Source: Calcarisporiella thermophila CBS 279.70
Taxonomy: Eukaryota; Fungi; Calcarisporiellomycota
Assembly: GCF_041956535.1 (NCBI RefSeq)
Contig: NW_027192198.1
Span: 628,714 to 692,713, forward strand
Length of the DNA stretch: 64,000 nucleotides
Direction of reading: 5' to 3'
Part shown: positions 509 to 8,381 of the stretch, in pieces
Layout: each line of letters opens with the position of its first letter
Numbering within the stretch: position 1 is the stretch's first letter
Position numbers and translations under genes: made by a program
The notes under the pieces: generated by a model
What the model saw: only the letters and a program-made list of their open reading frames with translations
Database searches by the model: none
Told to the model about the DNA's origin: nothing

Positions 509-3500
509 ATGGCGTTGAAACCTTGGTTAGTAGCTACATTGATCGTATCGGTGATAAGGCTAGGGGACGCAGCATTCAGTAAGTGGCATTAGATATGAAA
601 TAGGAACATTATTATCCCTAATCTCTCATCTGCTCTTCCAATTCTCTGTAGTTCCATTGCACGGTAACGAGCATTTTACTGCCCAGAAATTGAACCCACG
701 CTCAGACAATGGCCATCAACAAAGCCAAGAGATCTCACCCAACGATGTAATTCGCCCCTCCAACCACCGTGTTCATAATTCAATTGGCCCACGCGATGGT
801 GGATTACTTAACGGTTTGCTCGGAGGCTTGTTAAATGGGAATGACAATAGCCCACAATCAAATCAGTACAGCCTCAAGTCAGGAGAAAACGGTGGGAGAC
901 GTAATGGAGGTTTGCTAAACAACCTTCTGGACGGAGTGCTTGGCGAGATCTTGGGAAGTGATCAGGGCGAAACCTATTCATACAACAAACCCTCACGTCA
1001 TCGCCATAAACACAAGAATAAATCGAAGAAAAAGAAACACCATTCCTCGTCTCACAAGCATAAGAAGCATCACAAAAAGAAGCATGCACACAAGAAGAGA
1101 GATGTCCATTTAAAGAAGCGCGGTGTTGAGGATGGTGATACCTTTGGTGTAATCGAGGACGATTTTAATGAAATGGCTGACGAACTCGAGAAGGTATGTT
1201 TAATATTTTGTGATGAAAAACTATAGGAAAATTCGTTAAAATGGTTATCACATCCGTAGACTATGTATGAATCTTTCGGATTTTCGGTCTCAGATGAAGA
1301 CGACGATGAGGACGACGATGAAGACGACGGTGAGGACGGCGATGACGATGCCGAAGATGACAACACCGATGACGAAGATGATGAAGATAACCAAGAAGAG
1401 GATGAATGTGATGAAGATGAAGATGACGAAGATGACGAGGGTGAAGGTGACGAGGATGAAGGTGACGAGGACGAAGGAGATGAAGGTGACGAGGACGAAG
1501 GAGATGAAGGTGACGAAGAAGATGAGGATGACGAAGGTGATGAGGAGGATGAAGGTGATGAGGAGGATGAGGAGAATGAGGGCGATGAAGGTGATGTGGA
1601 GGATGAGAGTAACGAGGGTGATGAGGCCGACAGTGGAGAAGAAGGCGATGAGGAGGGCGATGAATTAGGTGGTGAGGAAGGTGGTGACGAGGAGGGCGGT
1701 GAAGGCGATGAGGAAAACGACGAGGAAGGAGGCGAGGGAGGCGACGAGGAGGGCGGCGAGGAAGAAGGTGATGAGGGCGGCGAGGAAGGCAGCGAAGACG
1801 GTGATGAAATTGGCGGCGAGGAAGGTGGCGAGGAAGGTGGCGAGGAAGGTGGCGAGGAAGACGGCGAGGAAGGTGGTGAGCTAGGCGGTGAGGAAGGTGG
1901 AGAGGAAGGTGGAGAGGAGGGAAATGAAGAAGGCGACGAGCTAGGCGTGGAGGAGGGTGACGAAGGAAGCGGTGAAGAAGGTGGTGAGATAGGCGGCGAG
2001 GAAGGTGATGAGCTTGGCGGAGAGGAGGGTGATGAAGAGGGTGGTGAGATGGGTGGTGAGGAGGGAGGCGATGAAATAAGTGGAGAGGAGGGTAGTGGGG
2101 AGGAGACCGAGGAAGTGAGTGAGGAGGAAGGTGGGGATATTGGAGAAGAAGATGGGGGAGAAATTGACGGGGAAGAAGGAGAAAATGGAGTGGAGGAAAT
2201 TGGGGGGGAGGAAGGGGAAGAAGAAGGGGAAGAGGAAGGAGGTGGGGAAGGAAGTGAGGAGAGTGGTGAAGAAGGCGAAGAGAGTGAGGAGGAGAGTGGT
2301 CAAGAAATTGGGGAAGAGAGCGGTGAGGAAGAGAGCGATGAAGTTAGCGAGGATGTCGGAGAAGAAAGCGGCGAAGAAAGCGGCGGAGAAGAGTTTGATG
2401 AGAATACTGAGGAAGACGTGGATACAAGCGGCGATGCTGAAGGAGAGCTACAAAACGAGAGTGGAGGGGAAGGGGAAGAATCATCCGAAGGAGAAAGTGG
2501 AGTTGAAGAAGTAAGCAATGAAACCGATGTTGAGGAGGACAGTGAACAGGGAGATGAGGAGGATAGCACCGAATCAGAGAGCAACGAAGAAGAGAGCAAC
2601 GAAGAAGAGAGCAACGAAGAAGAGAACAATGAGGAAAGCAGCGAAGAAGAGGAATCCATCGAAGAGGGAGGAGAGCAAGGTGTAGAAGAGAATAGCGGGG
2701 GAGAGGAGAGTAACGAGGAAGAGGAAACCGTTGAAGAAGGAGTGGAGCAAGGCGTAGAGGAGAATAGCGGAGGAGAGGAGAGTAACGAGGAAGAGGAAAG
2801 CGTTGAGGAAGAAGTGGAGCAAGACATAGAGGAAAATAGCGGGTCAGAAGAAAGCACCGAGGAGAGTAGTGAGGAGGAGAGTAATGAAGAGGAAGAAACT
2901 TTCGAGGAAGATGGTGGCCAGCAAGTAGAAGAGAACAGCGGAGGCGAGGAGAGTAGTGAGACCGAAGGAACTGTTGAAGAAGGAGGGGGAGAAGTGCAAG
3001 AAGTTAGCGAGAGCAGTGGAGAAGTGCAAGATGAGAATGGGGAGTACCAAGAGTGGGAGGAGAATTATGGTGAAGAAGAGACCTATGAAGAAGGAGAAAG
3101 CAGCGATGAATATGAGACTCACGAAGAGAGCCATGAAGAAGGGTACAGCGAAAACAGTGAGGAGAGTGGCAGTAGCGAAGGTATTGACGAGGTGGAAAAT
3201 GGGCAAGAGAGCGTATCACAGTGTAACGATACTAAGATAGCTGCCCAAAAATATCCTTCAAGTAACCGCATCACTCCTGGGTCTACGCTCTCCCGCCCAC
3301 TCAACGTGACCTTCGCATCCGCGAGCTTCCCGAAACCTGTCCGTGAAAATCCAGGCAACATCAATCCACCACTTGAAAATGGTCTCCCACCAATGCCTAC
3401 CTGTGTGGTTCAACAAGTGATGGCCAGCAATGCGCAACCACGCCCTAGTAGCGCTTTTGTTGCAAGAAGTTCTGCAGGATATCTCCAATACGCTGCGTAC

Positions 3501-5311
3501 AACCAAAAGGGAGATCGTCTACTGGACTTTAGCGGTGTCGGATACTATGGCGGTGCAGAAGTCCCTTCCACAATGCCTGTAATTGCAAGACTCACTCCTT
3601 CTGGCGGAGACGACTCTCACTTCATCCAGCAGGCAATTGTTAATGCTTCCCGGGCCCCCGTTGTAAACGGATATCGTGGTGCAGTCCAACTTGAAGCCGG
3701 CACCTTCATTATGCGTAAACCAATACGTATTGCGAACAGTGGCATTGTATTGCAAGGGGTACCCGGAAAAACGCGCGTTCTTGCCAAAGTGGACCCCAGG
3801 GTAAATCAGGAGCTTATCCTCATCAAGGGGCGAGGGCCAAACAAGAAAGATGAATTCGCGCGTCGTAAAGTGGTCGATTCGTACGTCCCAGTTGGATCCT
3901 ATCTACTTACCCTGGAACACGTTGGTGACCTGAAAGTTGGAGATACAATTGTAGTGGGGCGGGTTGGCAACCAGCAGTGGATTAAAGCTCTAGAGATGGA
4001 CGTGAGTAAACTATTGATTTGAATCTATTTTTTAAATATTGATTTCTTCGAAATTAATAGATTTATCCAAATGTCTGGAGATCCTCATCGGATGCCCGCG
4101 CATATAGAAATGTTGTTGCCGTTGACCCCTTGAAGAAAACCATCGTTATCGATAAGTGAGTAGGCTTTTCGATTGAAAAATCAGCTCTAAATAAGCGCTC
4201 GATATTTCTGGAGATACACTCTTCGAATACTAATGTTCTTGTGTATTGTTTTTTTCTATTAGCCCTATGCCCATTTCAATAGACAAGCAATGGGTAAGAA
4301 ATATACATATAAAAATATTTTCGTTGCGATGCTAAATACAACTTTCATATAGGGAGGAGGTTGGGTTGCGAAGTATACTAATAGGCGCATCAAGCATGTA
4401 GGAGTCCAGAACATCCTCTTTGAGTGTCCTTTCAACCGTGGTCGTTCTGTAAAGGATATTAGAGTACCTGAAGTACGCGACGGTGACTACCGCTTTGCAC
4501 CCGAAATGTTACAGAATTTCGTATTTACTGTGGATGGCGCCGAGCATTCTTGGGTGCGAAATGTAGTTGGCGAATATTTCCACAACTTCATCCATGTAGC
4601 AGAAGGCAGCAAATCAGTCACAGTCGATGTAAGTATATTGTGAATATCTTGTGTTCGTTATGGCTCATTCTCAATTTTCTTTTTCTTTTATCTTTGGTAG
4701 AATTGCGATCATCGCTATCCGGTTAAATTCTTGAGCGGCCATAATTCGTTTAAGGTTGGTGGACAACTCGTGTTGGTGAAAAATTCCAGAAGCGAGTCCA
4801 ACTTCCACAATTTCCTTGTATCTGGCTATGTTATGGGACCCAATGTTTTCACCAACTGCACTGTCTACAATACCCCTACGGATCACGAGAGCAATATGGG
4901 ACCGCATATGCACTTTTCAACAGGTGTATTGATGGAGAGTAAGTGGAGAGAGTACAATAGTGAAGTACCAGGATATCGATTGATTTTCTTTCTATTTTGC
5001 AAATAGATATCAAGACGGATGGCAATATCGAGATGATGGAGGCAGCAGCGTTTGGCTCCGGCCACGGTTGGCAAGCAGGCAACTCTGTTATCTGGAATAG
5101 CGAAGCTAACAAGGTTCTAGTGCAATCTCCACCGACATCAGCCAACTTTGAAATCGGTACAATTGTGAAGGCGGGGAACTCCAAAATTAGGAGTAAAGCA
5201 CATGTTGATGTTGGTATTGTTGAAATGCGTGGGGTCCATGTCCAACCATGGAGTTTGTATAATGCTCAAATGGCTGATAAGCAGTTAAGAGCGGGATTAT
5301 GTAAGATATAA
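509..5311 (+). CDS. Secreted multi-module protein: signal peptide, His/Lys-rich propeptide region, giant Asp/Glu-rich repeat, C-terminal pectate-lyase-like beta-helix domain (8 exons)
   Basis: ATG 509 gives MALKPWLVATLIVSVIRLGDAAF (signal-like). GT-AG introns 579-651 and 1194-1259 join ORFs 657 and 1263 in frame. Five further introns (4002-5006 region) splice in frame to TAA at 5311. The C-terminus has DFSGVGYYGG, GDDSHFIQQAI, GYRGAVQLEAGTF, SGIVLQG, GPH..STGVL and GSGHGWQAGNSVIWN, typical of bacterial beta-helix polysaccharide-lyase-like proteins. Confidence 0.8.
1293..3200 (+). repeat. Coding low-complexity tandem repeats (D/E/G/S)
   Basis: GDEDE/GDEEG/GGEEG pentapeptide arrays (15-nt period), SNEEE array near 2580-2640, and 24-aa (72-nt) units EEGVEQGVEENSGGEESNEEEE near 2655-2970. 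Confidence 0.95.
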
Positions 5312-5954: not shown

Positions 5955-8381
5955 ATGGGATTAAGTAAATGTCATCTTTCATCAATTTAGACATCACGCT
6001 ACTAAAACTCAATCTTTGTGTTTGAATTCAAAAATTATATTTTCCATCTAGATAATATAGTTGCTGGAGCAGTAGTTGCTGCAGCGGCTGCTATGTATGC
6101 CGACAGCAAATTCTTCTTAAGGGAAGATTTGAAACATATATCTACTATTATTGGCGTACCGAAGCAGTGAGTCTCTATACCTAATGGCTCCGAATATGCC
6201 TGGCTAATGTTTTAACTCTAATATCAGTATAGAAAAAATGAATAAAGAAGGCAAGATGAACATATCCAACCTGTTTATCGATAGAGCACGAGATAACATG
6301 AATAAGCCGTATCTTTTTTTCGAGGACCAGATACTGACTTATGGGGAAATTGACAAAAGTAGAATTTAAACGTTCTATTATATGCTTATAAGGGCACTTA
6401 GCTTTGAGTCAAATAATTAGGATCCAATCAGTTGGGACATTTCTTGTTGTCAAGAGGCGTGAAGCGAAATGGTAGGTTACTCTCTTTTCTCGAAAGTAGC
6501 TAATTTCTTTCTTGGCTCAATGATTGCAATTATTTTTCGATATTAGATATCGTTGCTATATTTCTGCAAAATAGCCCAGAGTTTATCATATCTTGGATAG
6601 CCATCAATAAAATTGGAGCAGTAGCCGCATTCATAAACAACCAACTTACTTCCTCTCCTTTAATTCACTGTTTACGCGTGTCTAACGCTCGCGTTCTTCT
6701 AATTGACCCAGAGATTAGTGGAGGTGTGCTTGATCAATTGGCAGTGATTAGAGAGCTGGGTATGGAGATATGGTCAATTGGAGAGCAGGAGCTAGGATTT
6801 TGTGGTGCCGTGAACAGAACTCTGCTAGCAACATTTAGTGAAGAGACGACGCCAGAAGAATTGCGAATGCATGCGAAACCCCTGGACAAGGCGATACTAA
6901 TATATACAAGCGGAACGACTGGATTTCCTAAAGTTTGTCTCTCGATTTAGTTACTTTACATTCATCTGAAGACAAGTATGCTCAATATTGTTGCTATTTG
7001 ATAGCCGGCTGTCAACTATTTCTCTCGTATACAGTGTAGGTGGATCTCAACTCATACTTGTGTAACGTTCGTATTGTTCTGATATACCTCTGTAATATAG
7101 TGACCACCTACGTCTGGACTAAACTCTACGGTCTCAGTCCATCGGATCGAGTTTACTGCTGTTTGCCTCTCTATCATAGTTCAGCAGGCAAATATCAATT
7201 TATATTCCGATGGTAGATTATACTATACGCCTAATAGTTAAATTAATACGAATTAGCGATACTTGGTGCAGCAACTTCCTGGCTCTCCGGCTCTAGCTTC
7301 GTACTTGCCAAACGATTTTCTGCTAGGAATTTCTGGAACGACATCCGAAAGCACGATGCAACAGTGATAATGTATATTGGAGAGATTTTGCGATATGTCC
7401 TCGCTCAGCCCCCTTCGCCTCTGGACCGTGCGCATAGAGTTCGGCTGGCGTATGGAAATGGCCTTCAGGCAGGAGTTTGGAAAAAGTTGCGACAACGTTA
7501 TGGAGTCCCAGTGATAGGTGAATTCTTCACCTCTACCGAAGGTGTGTCAGCACTTTTTAATACAAATAGAGGCGAAATTGGCATTGGGGCAGCTGGGCAC
7601 CGTGGATTGCTGATGCAGTATATGCCACCCAGGGCCTATATAATTAAATTGGATCCGGAAACAGAGGAGCCGCTCAGAGATAAACAAGGGCTATGTGTAG
7701 TGGCAGAAACAGGAGAGACTGGAGAATTGGTAGTGGAGATAATTGAAAATCAATTCAATCGTTTTGCTGGATACTATAATAACAAGGAAGAAACTAATAA
7801 GAAGCTAGTACAAAACGTGAGAAAAAAGGGTGATCGGTAAACATACATTTTATTTTTCTAATCGATTAAAGCCCCATTGTAAGTCCTGACCTTTCTATAG
7901 TTTTTTCCGGTTTGGTGATCTTATGAAAAAGGACAAGGATGGATTTTACTGGTTTGTTGATCGTATTGGGGACACGTATCGCTGGAAGTCTGAAAACGTT
8001 AGCACTGCAGAAGTTGCCTCTATCGTATCAGAATATCCTGGTATAGATGACCTCATTATTTGTGGAGTGAAGGTTCCGGGCCATGAGGGCCGGGCAGGAC
8101 TAGCCGGAATCGTGCCTGGGCCTAATTTCGATATAAAAGGACTCGCCCCATTCCTCAAAGCTAAATTGCAATCATATGCAATACCGGTGTTCGTACGCAT
8201 TGTAGAGAGCTTAGAATTGACAGGCACCTATAAACTTAAGAAGCTCGAACTGCAGCGGATCGGCATTACCCCTCAAACGGCGGGTAAGGACGATCATATT
8301 TATTGGCTGTGCCAGGGAGAATACCGGCCTTTTGGAAAAGTTGAATATGAACGCTTAATAGGTGGAAATGTTAAACTCTAA
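5955..8381 (+). CDS. FAT1: Fatty acid transport protein / very-long-chain acyl-CoA synthetase (FATP family), multi-exon
   Basis: IYTSGTTGFPK AMP-binding motif, YIGEILRY, EFFTSTEG, FVDRIGDTYRWKSENVST, LTGTYK. C-terminal VKL is PTS1-like. Confidence 0.93.

What the first reader, a model, noticed from the sequence alone, without database searches (positions are those of the whole stretch)
509..5311. Secreted polyelectrolyte / beta-helix fusion protein: candidate new cell-wall or biomineralisation system
Seen: one spliced ORF joins a signal peptide, a basic His/Lys block, about 650 residues with no Lys or Arg (mostly E, D, G, S) and a pectate-lyase-like beta-helix domain. Known: extremely acidic secreted proteins template Ca minerals in animals (aspein, bone sialoprotein). 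Zygomycete walls contain polycationic chitosan and polyuronates, and many carry calcium-oxalate crystals. Inference: the acidic arm could tether the beta-helix domain to chitosan, supply Ca2+ to it, or nucleate Ca crystals on spores or sporangia. I know of no characterised protein with this architecture.
Basis: partly seen in the sequence, partly recalled or inferred. Interest (0 to 1): 0.85.

Follow-up and report, generated by a model that had tools for sequence, protein, structure and literature searches.

The report
Beta-helix glycan enzyme with giant acidic arm
A Calcarisporiella thermophila gene appears to encode a secreted sugar-polymer-cutting enzyme domain carrying a 658-residue, lysine- and arginine-free acidic tail found in no relative; the tail's job and the gene's expression are untested.

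Summary
An eight-exon gene (509-5311, +; 1432 codons, all introns GT..AG, 59-107 nt) encodes five parts in order. They are a signal-like peptide, a Gly/Leu/Asn-rich stretch ending in a 44-residue His/Lys block, a 658-residue arm, a Pro-rich linker and a ~500-residue right-handed beta-helix. The arm has no Lys or Arg (E 40%, G 20%, D 12%, S 9%; net charge -347).

The arm and the start of the beta-helix lie in one uninterrupted exon, so that fusion needs no splicing. The arm is coding and under selection. It has 0 stops in frame against 11 and 108 in the other frames, and shuffles give a mean of 34. Third codon positions are near-uniform, and 2% random change would already create about 5 Lys/Arg.

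The beta-helix belongs to an unnamed, mostly bacterial family. That family is distant kin of PL29 lyases, carries alginate-binding CBM96 in some members, and sits next to or is fused with GH88-type (PF07470) genes. This points to a depolymeriser of uronic-acid glycans.

The genome has five paralogs, and Mucorales and Umbelopsis have homologs. None of 278 homologs carries such an arm, and the arm has no detectable homolog anywhere.

No RNA run was listed, so expression, secretion, enzyme activity and the chitosan, calcium or mineral ideas remain untested. I rate it a new variant of a known kind.

The parts
509..578 (+). Exon 1: ATG plus a 23-residue signal-peptide-like N-terminus (one Lys, a 12-residue hydrophobic core, small residues at -3/-1)
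   Evidence: Exon 2 has no in-frame ATG of its own (stop at 561, first start codon a TTG at 657), so an upstream exon is required.
579..651 (+). Intron 1 (73 nt, GTAAGT..TAG)
652..1193 (+). Exon 2: Gly/Leu/Asn-rich stretch with two GGLL-type repeats, then the basic block and the first acidic residues. Dibasic sites at 897-902 (RR), 1095-1100 (KR) and 1116-1121 (KR).
   Evidence: No Pfam family reaches its cut-off.
990..1121 (+). His/Lys block: 44 residues with 17 K, 12 H and 4 R, ending in KKR just before the acidic part
1194..1259 (+). Intron 2 (66 nt, GTATGT..TAG). It holds an in-frame TAG at 1227-1229, so retaining it would separate the upstream peptide from an ATG at 1263.
   Evidence: Not confirmed by RNA.
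1260..3233 (+). Acidic arm: 658 residues without Lys or Arg, net charge -347. Four zones: Asp/Glu-rich (residues 1-110), Glu/Gly-rich (111-340), Glu/Ser-rich (341-560), mixed Glu/Ser/Gly/Tyr (561-658). Built of degenerate tandem repeats whose periods are all multiples of 3.
3234..3437 (+). Pro-rich linker, in the same exon as the arm. Its last part aligns with the pre-domain segment of paralog P0001.
3438..4001 (+). N-terminal cap and first rungs of the beta-helix domain (end of exon 3)
   Evidence: 61% identity to P0001. All family-invariant residues are kept. AF2 model of this piece has pLDDT 84. Its fold matches are beta-helix N-termini but weak, Z <= 6.1.
4002..4060 (+). Intron 3 (59 nt); absent from the paralog on contig 2
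4061..4155 (+). Exon 4
   Evidence: Aligns to P0001 and the family; conserved W, R and D kept.
4156..4262 (+). Intron 4 (107 nt)
4263..4293 (+). Exon 5 (31 nt)
4294..4352 (+). Intron 5 (59 nt)
4353..4628 (+). Exon 6: middle rungs of the beta-helix
4629..4700 (+). Intron 6 (72 nt)
4701..4938 (+). Exon 7: beta-helix rungs with the conserved GPN and PH motifs
4939..5006 (+). Intron 7 (68 nt)
5007..5311 (+). Exon 8: last rungs (GSGHGW motif), C-terminal helix, stop codon at 5309-5311

Best explanation
This is one real gene of Calcarisporiella thermophila for a secreted, modular protein. Its working end is a ~500-residue right-handed beta-helix of an unnamed, mainly bacterial family that most likely cuts uronic-acid-containing polysaccharides, probably by beta-elimination. 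In Mucoromycota the natural candidates are the wall and extracellular glucuronans (mucoran, mucoric acid). After a recent duplication, this copy alone grew a 658-residue disordered polyanionic arm, at the place where its sister has a short acidic linker, with a short His/Lys block in front of it. Shown: the arm is translated sequence, and selection keeps it free of Lys, Arg and stops. Inferred, at about one chance in three: the arm works electrostatically, holding the enzyme in the polycationic chitosan-rich wall and/or competing with glucuronan for chitosan so that the substrate becomes accessible. Also inferred: Kex2-type cutting after the KKR sites may release the basic N-terminal piece.
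For: Gene model:
- All seven introns are canonical, 59-107 nt, and the CDS is in frame.
- Every C-terminal exon aligns with the NCBI protein of the paralog, VTP21DRAFT_4727, and with the family's conserved residues.
- The arm and the beta-helix start share one exon.

The arm is coding and selected:
- 0 stops in frame against 11 and 108 in the other frames and a mean of 33.6 in shuffles.
- Base composition has a 3-nt period, with a near-uniform third position.
- Synonymous codon ratios equal those of the rest of the gene.
- All repeat periods are multiples of 3 and copies are only 60-83% alike.
- 508 of 658 codons are one step from Lys or Arg, and 2% random change gives 4.8 Lys/Arg, with P(none) = 0.004.

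Fold:
- The AF2 model of the paralog has pLDDT 85.
- It matches GH28 1bhe at Z 27.7 (rmsd 2.8, 294 aligned), 7chu at 25.9, an alginate epimerase/lyase at 25.8 and K5 lyase at 23.8.

Link to acidic glycans:
- 37 of 44 family members weakly hit the PL29 BT3328 model.
- Some members carry CBM96, an alginate-specific module (PMC9971899).
- The gene is adjacent to or fused with PF07470 (GH88-type) in 3 of 7 bacterial contexts, across two phyla.
- One context has an alginate-lyase-family neighbour and one an altronate-type dehydratase.

Wall background: Mucorales walls hold 12-25% polyuronide, non-covalently bound to polyglucosamine, and release uronide oligomers through unidentified endo-enzymes (PMC6433966).

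The arm is lineage-specific: WINDOW and P0001 are sisters (SH-aLRT 96), and no homolog has an arm.
Against: - No RNA run was listed, so no junction, and in particular not intron 2, is confirmed.
- The protein as modelled was not found in the public protein sets searched.
- The signal peptide was judged by eye and hydropathy only, and it has an Arg in its c-region.
- The Mucorales and Umbelopsis homologs have no signal peptide, so the family is not uniformly extracellular.
- No member of the family has a measured activity.
- The window protein and its sister differ from the bacterial consensus at 5-7 of 42 conserved polar positions, including a 98%-conserved Glu changed to Gln, so activity or specificity may differ.
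- The wall composition of Calcarisporiella is not documented here.
- Nothing links the arm to chitosan beyond charge.
Confidence: 0.5

Rival explanations
1. The arm is a tolerated runaway repeat expansion of a linker with no specific task. It acts only as a soluble, protease-resistant spacer or entropic bristle, perhaps aiding solubility in a thermophile. Selection acts only against residues that would cause cleavage or collapse.
For: It is built of degenerate tandem repeats with periods of 6 to 72 nt. It occurs in one paralog of one species only. It has no homolog anywhere. The sister protein has a short acidic linker at the same place.
Against: Complete absence of Lys and Arg over 658 codons, with 508 codons one step away, is stricter than a mere spacer usually needs. 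A net charge of -347 next to a basic block looks designed for charge. This rival overlaps with the main reading and cannot be separated from it by sequence alone.
Confidence: 0.22
2. Two products rather than one. Intron 2 (1194-1259) is retained or is not an intron, so 509-1229 gives a small secreted basic peptide precursor. A separate, non-secreted arm plus beta-helix protein then starts at ATG 1263.
For: There is an in-frame TAG at 1227-1229 and an ATG at 1263. The Mucorales and Umbelopsis homologs lack signal peptides. No RNA evidence is available.
Against: Only 33 nt separate the stop from that ATG (1230-1262), too little for a second promoter. The 66-nt interval has canonical GTATGT..TAG ends and a size typical of this gene's introns. 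The sister paralog is annotated with a signal peptide.
Confidence: 0.12
3. One reading: the arm is a high-capacity Ca2+ binder that feeds the enzyme or nucleates calcium oxalate or other crystals on the wall, like the acidic matrix proteins of animals.
For: Composition only: 53% Asp+Glu, a putative secretion signal, and 40 of 61 Ser in S-x-D/E context.
Against: There is no homology to any matrix protein. No mineral-related gene or domain was seen nearby. No report of crystals in this species was found. It is attached to a glycan-active fold, which such proteins do not carry.
Confidence: 0.08
4. The arm is a pro-region or pseudo-substrate. As a polyanion mimicking polyuronate it occupies the groove of the slightly basic beta-helix, or neutralises the His/Lys peptide, until it is removed.
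For: The domain has net charge +12, against a family median of -6. Dibasic sites flank the basic block.
Against: There is no dibasic or other obvious processing site between the arm and the domain. A charge of -347 is far more than is needed to balance about +21 from Lys and Arg (plus 12 His). This was not tested.
Confidence: 0.06
5. The acidic tract is not translated: it is a long intron or a non-coding purine-rich repeat.
For: Purine-rich DNA has few stops in any case. The protein is not in the public sets searched.
Against: Frame 0 has 0 stops against 11 and 108 in the other frames. There is strong 3-nt periodicity, and codon ratios equal those of the rest of the gene. The frame links exon 2 exactly to the beta-helix. 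The other introns are 59-107 nt.
Confidence: 0.02

Closest known systems
Unnamed bacterial beta-helix family (about 500-residue core, often with CBM96, DUF6298, dockerin, Big_2, F5/8-C or a Por tail), with fungal members in Mucorales and Umbelopsis
   Same: Clear sequence homology: E 1.5e-78 to the paralog and 1e-20 to 1e-29 to bacterial members. 35 of 42 conserved polar residues are kept. The fold is the same.
   Different: No other member has an acidic arm or a His/Lys block. The window protein and its sister have changed several conserved Arg, Glu and Trp positions. No member has a measured activity.
PL29 glycosaminoglycan lyase BT3328 of Bacteroides thetaiotaomicron (PMC6994673)
   Same: Weak profile similarity over about 200 residues in 37 of 44 family members (best E 4.4e-15). 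It also acts on a glucuronate-containing polyanion.
   Different: Scores of 14 to about 50 bits in the hits seen, against a curated cut-off of 1100 bits, so it is not a member. It lacks the ~300-residue N-terminal spacer of BT3328. Catalytic residues could not be compared.
GH28 polygalacturonases, AlgE-type mannuronan epimerase/lyases, K5 lyase, RbmB and phage capsule depolymerases
   Same: Right-handed parallel beta-helix, Z 23-28. Most of these act on acidic polysaccharides.
   Different: Only 8-17% identity. Pfam PF12708 is hit at E 0.038, below its cut-off. The catalytic motifs of those families were not identified here.
Highly acidic secreted matrix and Ca-binding proteins (aspein, phosphophoryn, calsequestrin). 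Recalled from memory: a lead, not a test.
   Same: Very high Asp/Glu content, disorder, secretory route.
   Different: No sequence relation. Those proteins carry no enzyme domain. The link to mineral is untested here.
Paired polycation/polyanion secreted precursors (diatom silaffin/silacidin, sandcastle-worm cement). Recalled from memory: a lead, not a test.
   Same: A basic block and a long acidic block in one secretory precursor, with dibasic sites between them.
   Different: The charges are grossly unequal (about +21 from Lys/Arg against -347). It is attached to a glycan-active domain. There is no evidence of coacervation or mineral.

Membership tests
Right-handed parallel beta-helix (pectate-lyase-like) superfamily | Beta-helix fold of stacked three-strand rungs | tested here: met
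   Model of paralog P0001:120-687 has pLDDT 85. It matches 1bhe at Z 27.7 (rmsd 2.8, 294 aligned), and 143 chains reach Z >= 8. The window protein is 61% identical to P0001. The window's own 188-residue piece folds alike, but its matches are weak, Z <= 6.1.
Right-handed parallel beta-helix (pectate-lyase-like) superfamily | Pfam PF12708 (Pect-lyase_RHGA_epim) above its gathering score | tested here: not met
   E 0.038, 14.2 bits against a cut-off of 27, N-terminal 68 residues only.
Unnamed CBM96/GH88-associated beta-helix family | Full-length sequence homology and the family's conserved residues | tested here: met
   All invariant columns are kept, and 35 of 42 conserved polar columns. It lies inside the fungal clade of the tree.
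Unnamed CBM96/GH88-associated beta-helix family | Depolymerising activity on a uronic-acid glycan | not testable with these tools
   Inferred only from the gene neighbourhoods and fusions of bacterial members and from CBM96.
PL29 (BT3328 family hyaluronan/chondroitin endo-lyase) | NCBIfam NF058554 at or above 1100 bits | tested here: not met
   P0001 scores 13.5-14.3 bits. The highest score seen in a family member is 50.8 bits (P0014); the best E-value is 4.4e-15.
Secreted protein (classical signal peptide) | N-terminal n/h/c regions with a cleavage site | tested here: inconclusive
   Hydropathy peaks at 2.86 over residues 8-16, there is a Lys at position 4, and a G-D-A site fits the -3/-1 rule. 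No dedicated predictor was available.
Acidic biomineralisation matrix proteins | Association with a mineral phase, or Ca2+ binding | not testable with these tools
   Only the composition matches. There is no homology.
Kex2-processed secreted precursors | Dibasic sites delimiting peptides, with processing in the Golgi | tested here: inconclusive
   Three dibasic sites lie in exon 2 (RR, KR, KR). Cleavage was not tested.

The most novel reading that the evidence does not exclude
This beta-helix family is the long-missing endo-depolymerase for the polyuronides (mucoran, mucoric acid) of Mucoromycota walls. In this copy, evolution added a -347-charge polyelectrolyte arm. The arm docks the enzyme on chitosan and displaces glucuronan from its ionic complex with chitosan. 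That would be a protein which uses polyelectrolyte exchange to open a fungal wall for remodelling.
Probability: 0.12. Interest if true: 0.8.

Novelty: new variant of a known kind. Interest (0 to 1): 0.55.

Why it matters
Two things would matter if confirmed.

First, the beta-helix family is large (about 2000 cluster representatives), uncharacterised and absent from Pfam as a family. It links bacterial uronate-utilisation loci with early-diverging fungi whose walls contain glucuronans. Uronide-releasing endo-enzymes were inferred in Mucor decades ago and never identified (PMC6433966).

Second, a secreted enzyme with a selected 658-residue Lys/Arg-free polyanionic arm is, as far as these searches reach, unique. 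It would be a natural test case for how extreme polyelectrolyte tails localise or regulate enzymes in a charged matrix such as a chitosan wall. It may also interest enzyme engineers, since the organism is a thermophile.

Without transcript or protein evidence it remains a well-supported prediction.

Tried and rejected
- RNA evidence: the look-up of sequencing runs listed no RNA run.
- Joined spliced protein: not built or sent to any tool. Exons were searched by reference, and the database paralog P0001 served as proxy for the whole domain.
- Arm homologs: none in 5.8 billion proteins, none elsewhere in the genome, no usable Atlas hit.
- Public model of this gene: not found. Neither a search allowing 503-1600 residues nor the representative library returned it. 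It may be unannotated or modelled differently.
- Sequence search of the PDB with P0001 alone gave only noise.
- Homology of the N-terminal pro-regions of the window protein and P0001: not significant (E >= 1.7). Only collinear short motifs were seen.
- The 98%-conserved Glu changed to Gln as a sign of a dead enzyme: rejected as evidence, because Glu and Gln alternate among the fungal homologs and the catalytic residues are unknown.
- The PL29 founding paper (PMC6240882) is not held, so catalytic residues could not be compared.
- Papers on Calcarisporiella gave nothing on this gene or its wall.
- The careful tree did not finish; the quick tree is reported.
Full report
**What is there.** The window lies on contig 8 of a 28-Mb, 116-contig genome. 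One of its paralogous genes is identical to an NCBI protein of Calcarisporiella thermophila, VTP21DRAFT_4727 (P0001). The organism is therefore this thermophilic member of the Mucoromycota.

Reading the sequence and checking it by script gives an eight-exon gene on the + strand:
- Exons: 509-578, 652-1193, 1260-4001, 4061-4155, 4263-4293, 4353-4628, 4701-4938 and 5007-5311.
- All seven introns are GT..AG with fungal-type donors and are 59-107 nt long.
- The coding sequence is 4299 nt (1432 codons plus the stop), with no internal stop.

The gene upstream is a VPS35 homolog on the other strand, about 1.2 kb away, with no ORF of 70 codons or more between. Exon 2 has no in-frame ATG of its own (stop at 561, then only a TTG at 657). 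It therefore needs exon 1, which supplies the ATG and a hydrophobic, signal-like peptide.

Exons were searched one by one by reference, and the database paralog served as proxy for the whole C-terminal domain.

**Checking the observation.**
- Exon 2 encodes a Gly/Leu/Asn-rich stretch and a 44-residue block with 17 Lys, 12 His and 4 Arg. Three dibasic sites are present, the last being KKR directly before the acidic part.
- Exon 3 begins with 658 residues that contain no Lys or Arg. Composition is E 40.3%, G 20.5%, D 12.5%, S 9.3%, with a net charge of -347.
- Exon 3 then runs on, without any stop or splice, into a Pro-rich linker and the first 188 residues of the beta-helix domain.

The arm/beta-helix fusion is thus a property of one continuous ORF (1263-4022). 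Only the link to the signal peptide and the basic block depends on introns 1 and 2.

**Is the arm really coding?** Purine-rich DNA has few stops in any frame, so I tested this directly.
- Stops: frame 0 has none in 1974 nt. The other two frames have 11 and 108. In 2000 shuffles the mean was 33.6 and none had zero.
- Periodicity: position 1 is 77% G and position 2 is 60% A. Position 3 is almost even (A 0.31, C 0.20, G 0.25, T 0.25).
- Codon choice: the ratios GAA:GAG, GAT:GAC and the four GGN codons are the same as in the rest of the gene.
- Repeats: all periods found are multiples of three (6 to 72 nt), and copies match only 60-83%. These are old, diverged repeats, not a fresh microsatellite.
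- Selection: 508 of the 658 codons are a single change away from Lys or Arg. In simulation, 2% random substitution already yields 4.8 Lys/Arg (P of none = 0.004) and 2.2 stops.

The tract is therefore translated, and selection keeps it free of basic residues. It has four zones: Asp/Glu-rich, Glu/Gly-rich, Glu/Ser-rich and a mixed zone.

**The beta-helix domain.**
- Pfam gives only a sub-threshold hit to PF12708 at the N-terminal cap (E 0.038).
- HMMER against 1.84 billion representatives finds 1960 relatives at E <= 0.001, nearly all bacterial or metagenomic.
- Many relatives are modular, carrying CBM96, DUF6298, dockerin, Big_2, F5/8-type-C or ricin domains, or a Por secretion tail.
- An AlphaFold model of the paralog (61% identical, aligned with 43 relatives) has pLDDT 85 and pTM 0.87. 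It is a right-handed parallel beta-helix.
- Fold matches: Z 27.7 to polygalacturonase 1bhe (rmsd 2.8, 294 aligned), 25.9 to 7chu, 25.8 to an alginate epimerase/lyase, 25.4 to AlgE4, 23.8 to K5 lyase and 23.5 to the RbmB lyase. Foldseek agrees.
- The window's own 188-residue piece folds with pLDDT 84 into the same cap and first rungs. Its matches are beta-helix N-termini, but at Z <= 6.1 they are weak on their own.
- Each C-terminal exon aligns with the family and keeps every invariant residue.

**What the family probably does.** No member has a measured activity, but four lines point to uronic-acid polysaccharides.
1. 37 of 44 members weakly match NCBI's model of the BT3328 family. BT3328 is the PL29 glycosaminoglycan lyase (PMC6994673). 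Scores are far below the cut-off, so this is distant kinship, not membership.
2. Some members carry CBM96, described as alginate-specific (PMC9971899).
3. In 3 of 7 bacterial contexts examined, the gene is next to or fused with a PF07470 (GH88-type, unsaturated uronyl hydrolase) gene.
   - A Pedobacter locus reads SusC/D, GH2, GH2, alginate-lyase family, this family, GH88.
   - A metagenomic SusD/GH2 locus holds a direct fusion.
   - Neobacillus niacini has GH88 immediately downstream.
4. Other contexts hold an altronate-type dehydratase or an enolase-superfamily enzyme with GH106. Two contexts were uninformative.

GH88-type enzymes act on the unsaturated ends made by lyases, so a lyase is the most economical guess. 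This is inference from context.

**Evolution of the fusion.**
- The genome has five paralogs. The other four have short N-termini without an acidic arm.
- Homologs exist in Umbelopsis, Fennellomyces, Dichotomocladium and Phycomyces (553-578 residues). They share a conserved non-hydrophobic N-terminus and have no signal peptide.
- In a quick maximum-likelihood tree of the exon-3 part, the window protein and P0001 are sisters (SH-aLRT 96). They sit inside a Calcarisporiella clade (89), next to a Mucorales/Umbelopsis clade (99). Together these (88) are nested among bacterial sequences. The careful search did not finish.
- None of the 278 homologs fetched has more than 33% Asp+Glu in any 100-residue window.
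- The arm finds nothing in 5.8 billion proteins, nothing elsewhere in its own genome and nothing usable in the Atlas.
- The sister protein has a short acidic linker at the same position. The pro-regions show only non-significant collinear motifs.

The arm is therefore a young, lineage-specific addition, probably grown from that linker. The window gene also has an intron (4002-4060) that its sister lacks.

**How it most likely works.**
Shown:
- a coherent gene model;
- an arm that is translated and under selection;
- a beta-helix of a family tied by context to acidic glycans.

Inferred:
- Secretion. The N-terminus has a Lys, a 12-residue hydrophobic core and a G-D-A site, and the sister is annotated with a signal peptide.
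- A glucuronan-type substrate. Mucorales walls contain 12-25% polyuronide, held non-covalently to polyglucosamine. Mucor releases uronide oligomers through endo-enzymes that have never been identified (PMC6433966).
- An electrostatic role for the arm. In such a wall, a -347 arm would bind chitosan. It could anchor the enzyme or compete with glucuronan for chitosan. I put this at roughly one in three.
- Processing. Kex2-type cleavage after KKR may detach the basic N-terminal piece.

The calcium and mineral reading has nothing in its favour beyond composition.

**Weak points.**
- No RNA run was listed, so the junctions, above all intron 2, are unconfirmed. If intron 2 were retained, a stop at 1227 and an ATG at 1263 would give a non-secreted arm-enzyme. 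The 33-nt gap between them (1230-1262) argues against a separate gene.
- The protein as modelled is not in the public sets searched.
- The window protein and its sister differ from the bacterial consensus at R284Q, E427Q, R579H, W580F and R600A (P0001 numbering). The window protein adds D587E and R679K. Catalytic residues are unknown, and Glu/Gln at 427 varies among fungi, so this says only that specificity or activity may differ.
- Calcarisporiella's wall chemistry is not documented in the papers found.

**Verdict.** Its parts are of known kinds: a beta-helix glycan enzyme plus a low-complexity acidic region. No function has been tested. I rate it a new variant of a known kind, of moderate to good interest.

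Noticed in passing
P0163-P0166 (Umbelopsis, Fennellomyces, Dichotomocladium, Phycomyces) and L004:1300-2427: The Mucorales and Umbelopsis homologs, and one Calcarisporiella paralog, start with a conserved, non-hydrophobic, helix-like N-terminus (MGGF.. or MAGLF..) instead of a signal peptide. Part of this carbohydrate-enzyme-like family may therefore be intracellular or membrane-associated in fungi.
   Followed up: partly
window 4002-4060 versus L002:1402-2547: The window gene has an intron after the conserved ..MD codon that the 61%-identical paralog on contig 2 lacks. This is an intron gain or loss since the duplication.
   Followed up: partly
P0168 (Selaginella moellendorffii, 1062 aa) and P0014 (955 aa): Two proteins carry the whole beta-helix domain twice in tandem. 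One is from a lycophyte, and its UniRef cluster carries the name 'Pectinesterase'. The family thus also occurs in a plant genome record.
   Followed up: no
L007:385-2921 (contig 8, upstream of the window, minus strand): The divergently oriented upstream neighbour looks like a VPS35 (retromer) gene. About 1.2 kb of ORF-poor DNA separates the two starts.
   Followed up: no
window 6018-7000: The downstream ORFs carry an AMP-binding-enzyme motif (acyl-CoA synthetase / FAT1-like). They are unrelated to the finding.
   Followed up: no
window 1350-3150: The coding strand is extremely purine-rich (GC skew up to +0.88, AT skew up to +0.71 over about 1.8 kb). Such a tract could form R-loops or triplex DNA and may be hard to assemble or amplify.
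   Followed up: no
L008:8841-12702, L010:7183-9780, L015:8001-12700: In bacteria of two phyla, the uncharacterised beta-helix family is adjacent to or fused with GH88-type (PF07470) genes. This makes it a good candidate for a new polysaccharide lyase family, worth biochemical testing in its own right.
   Followed up: partly
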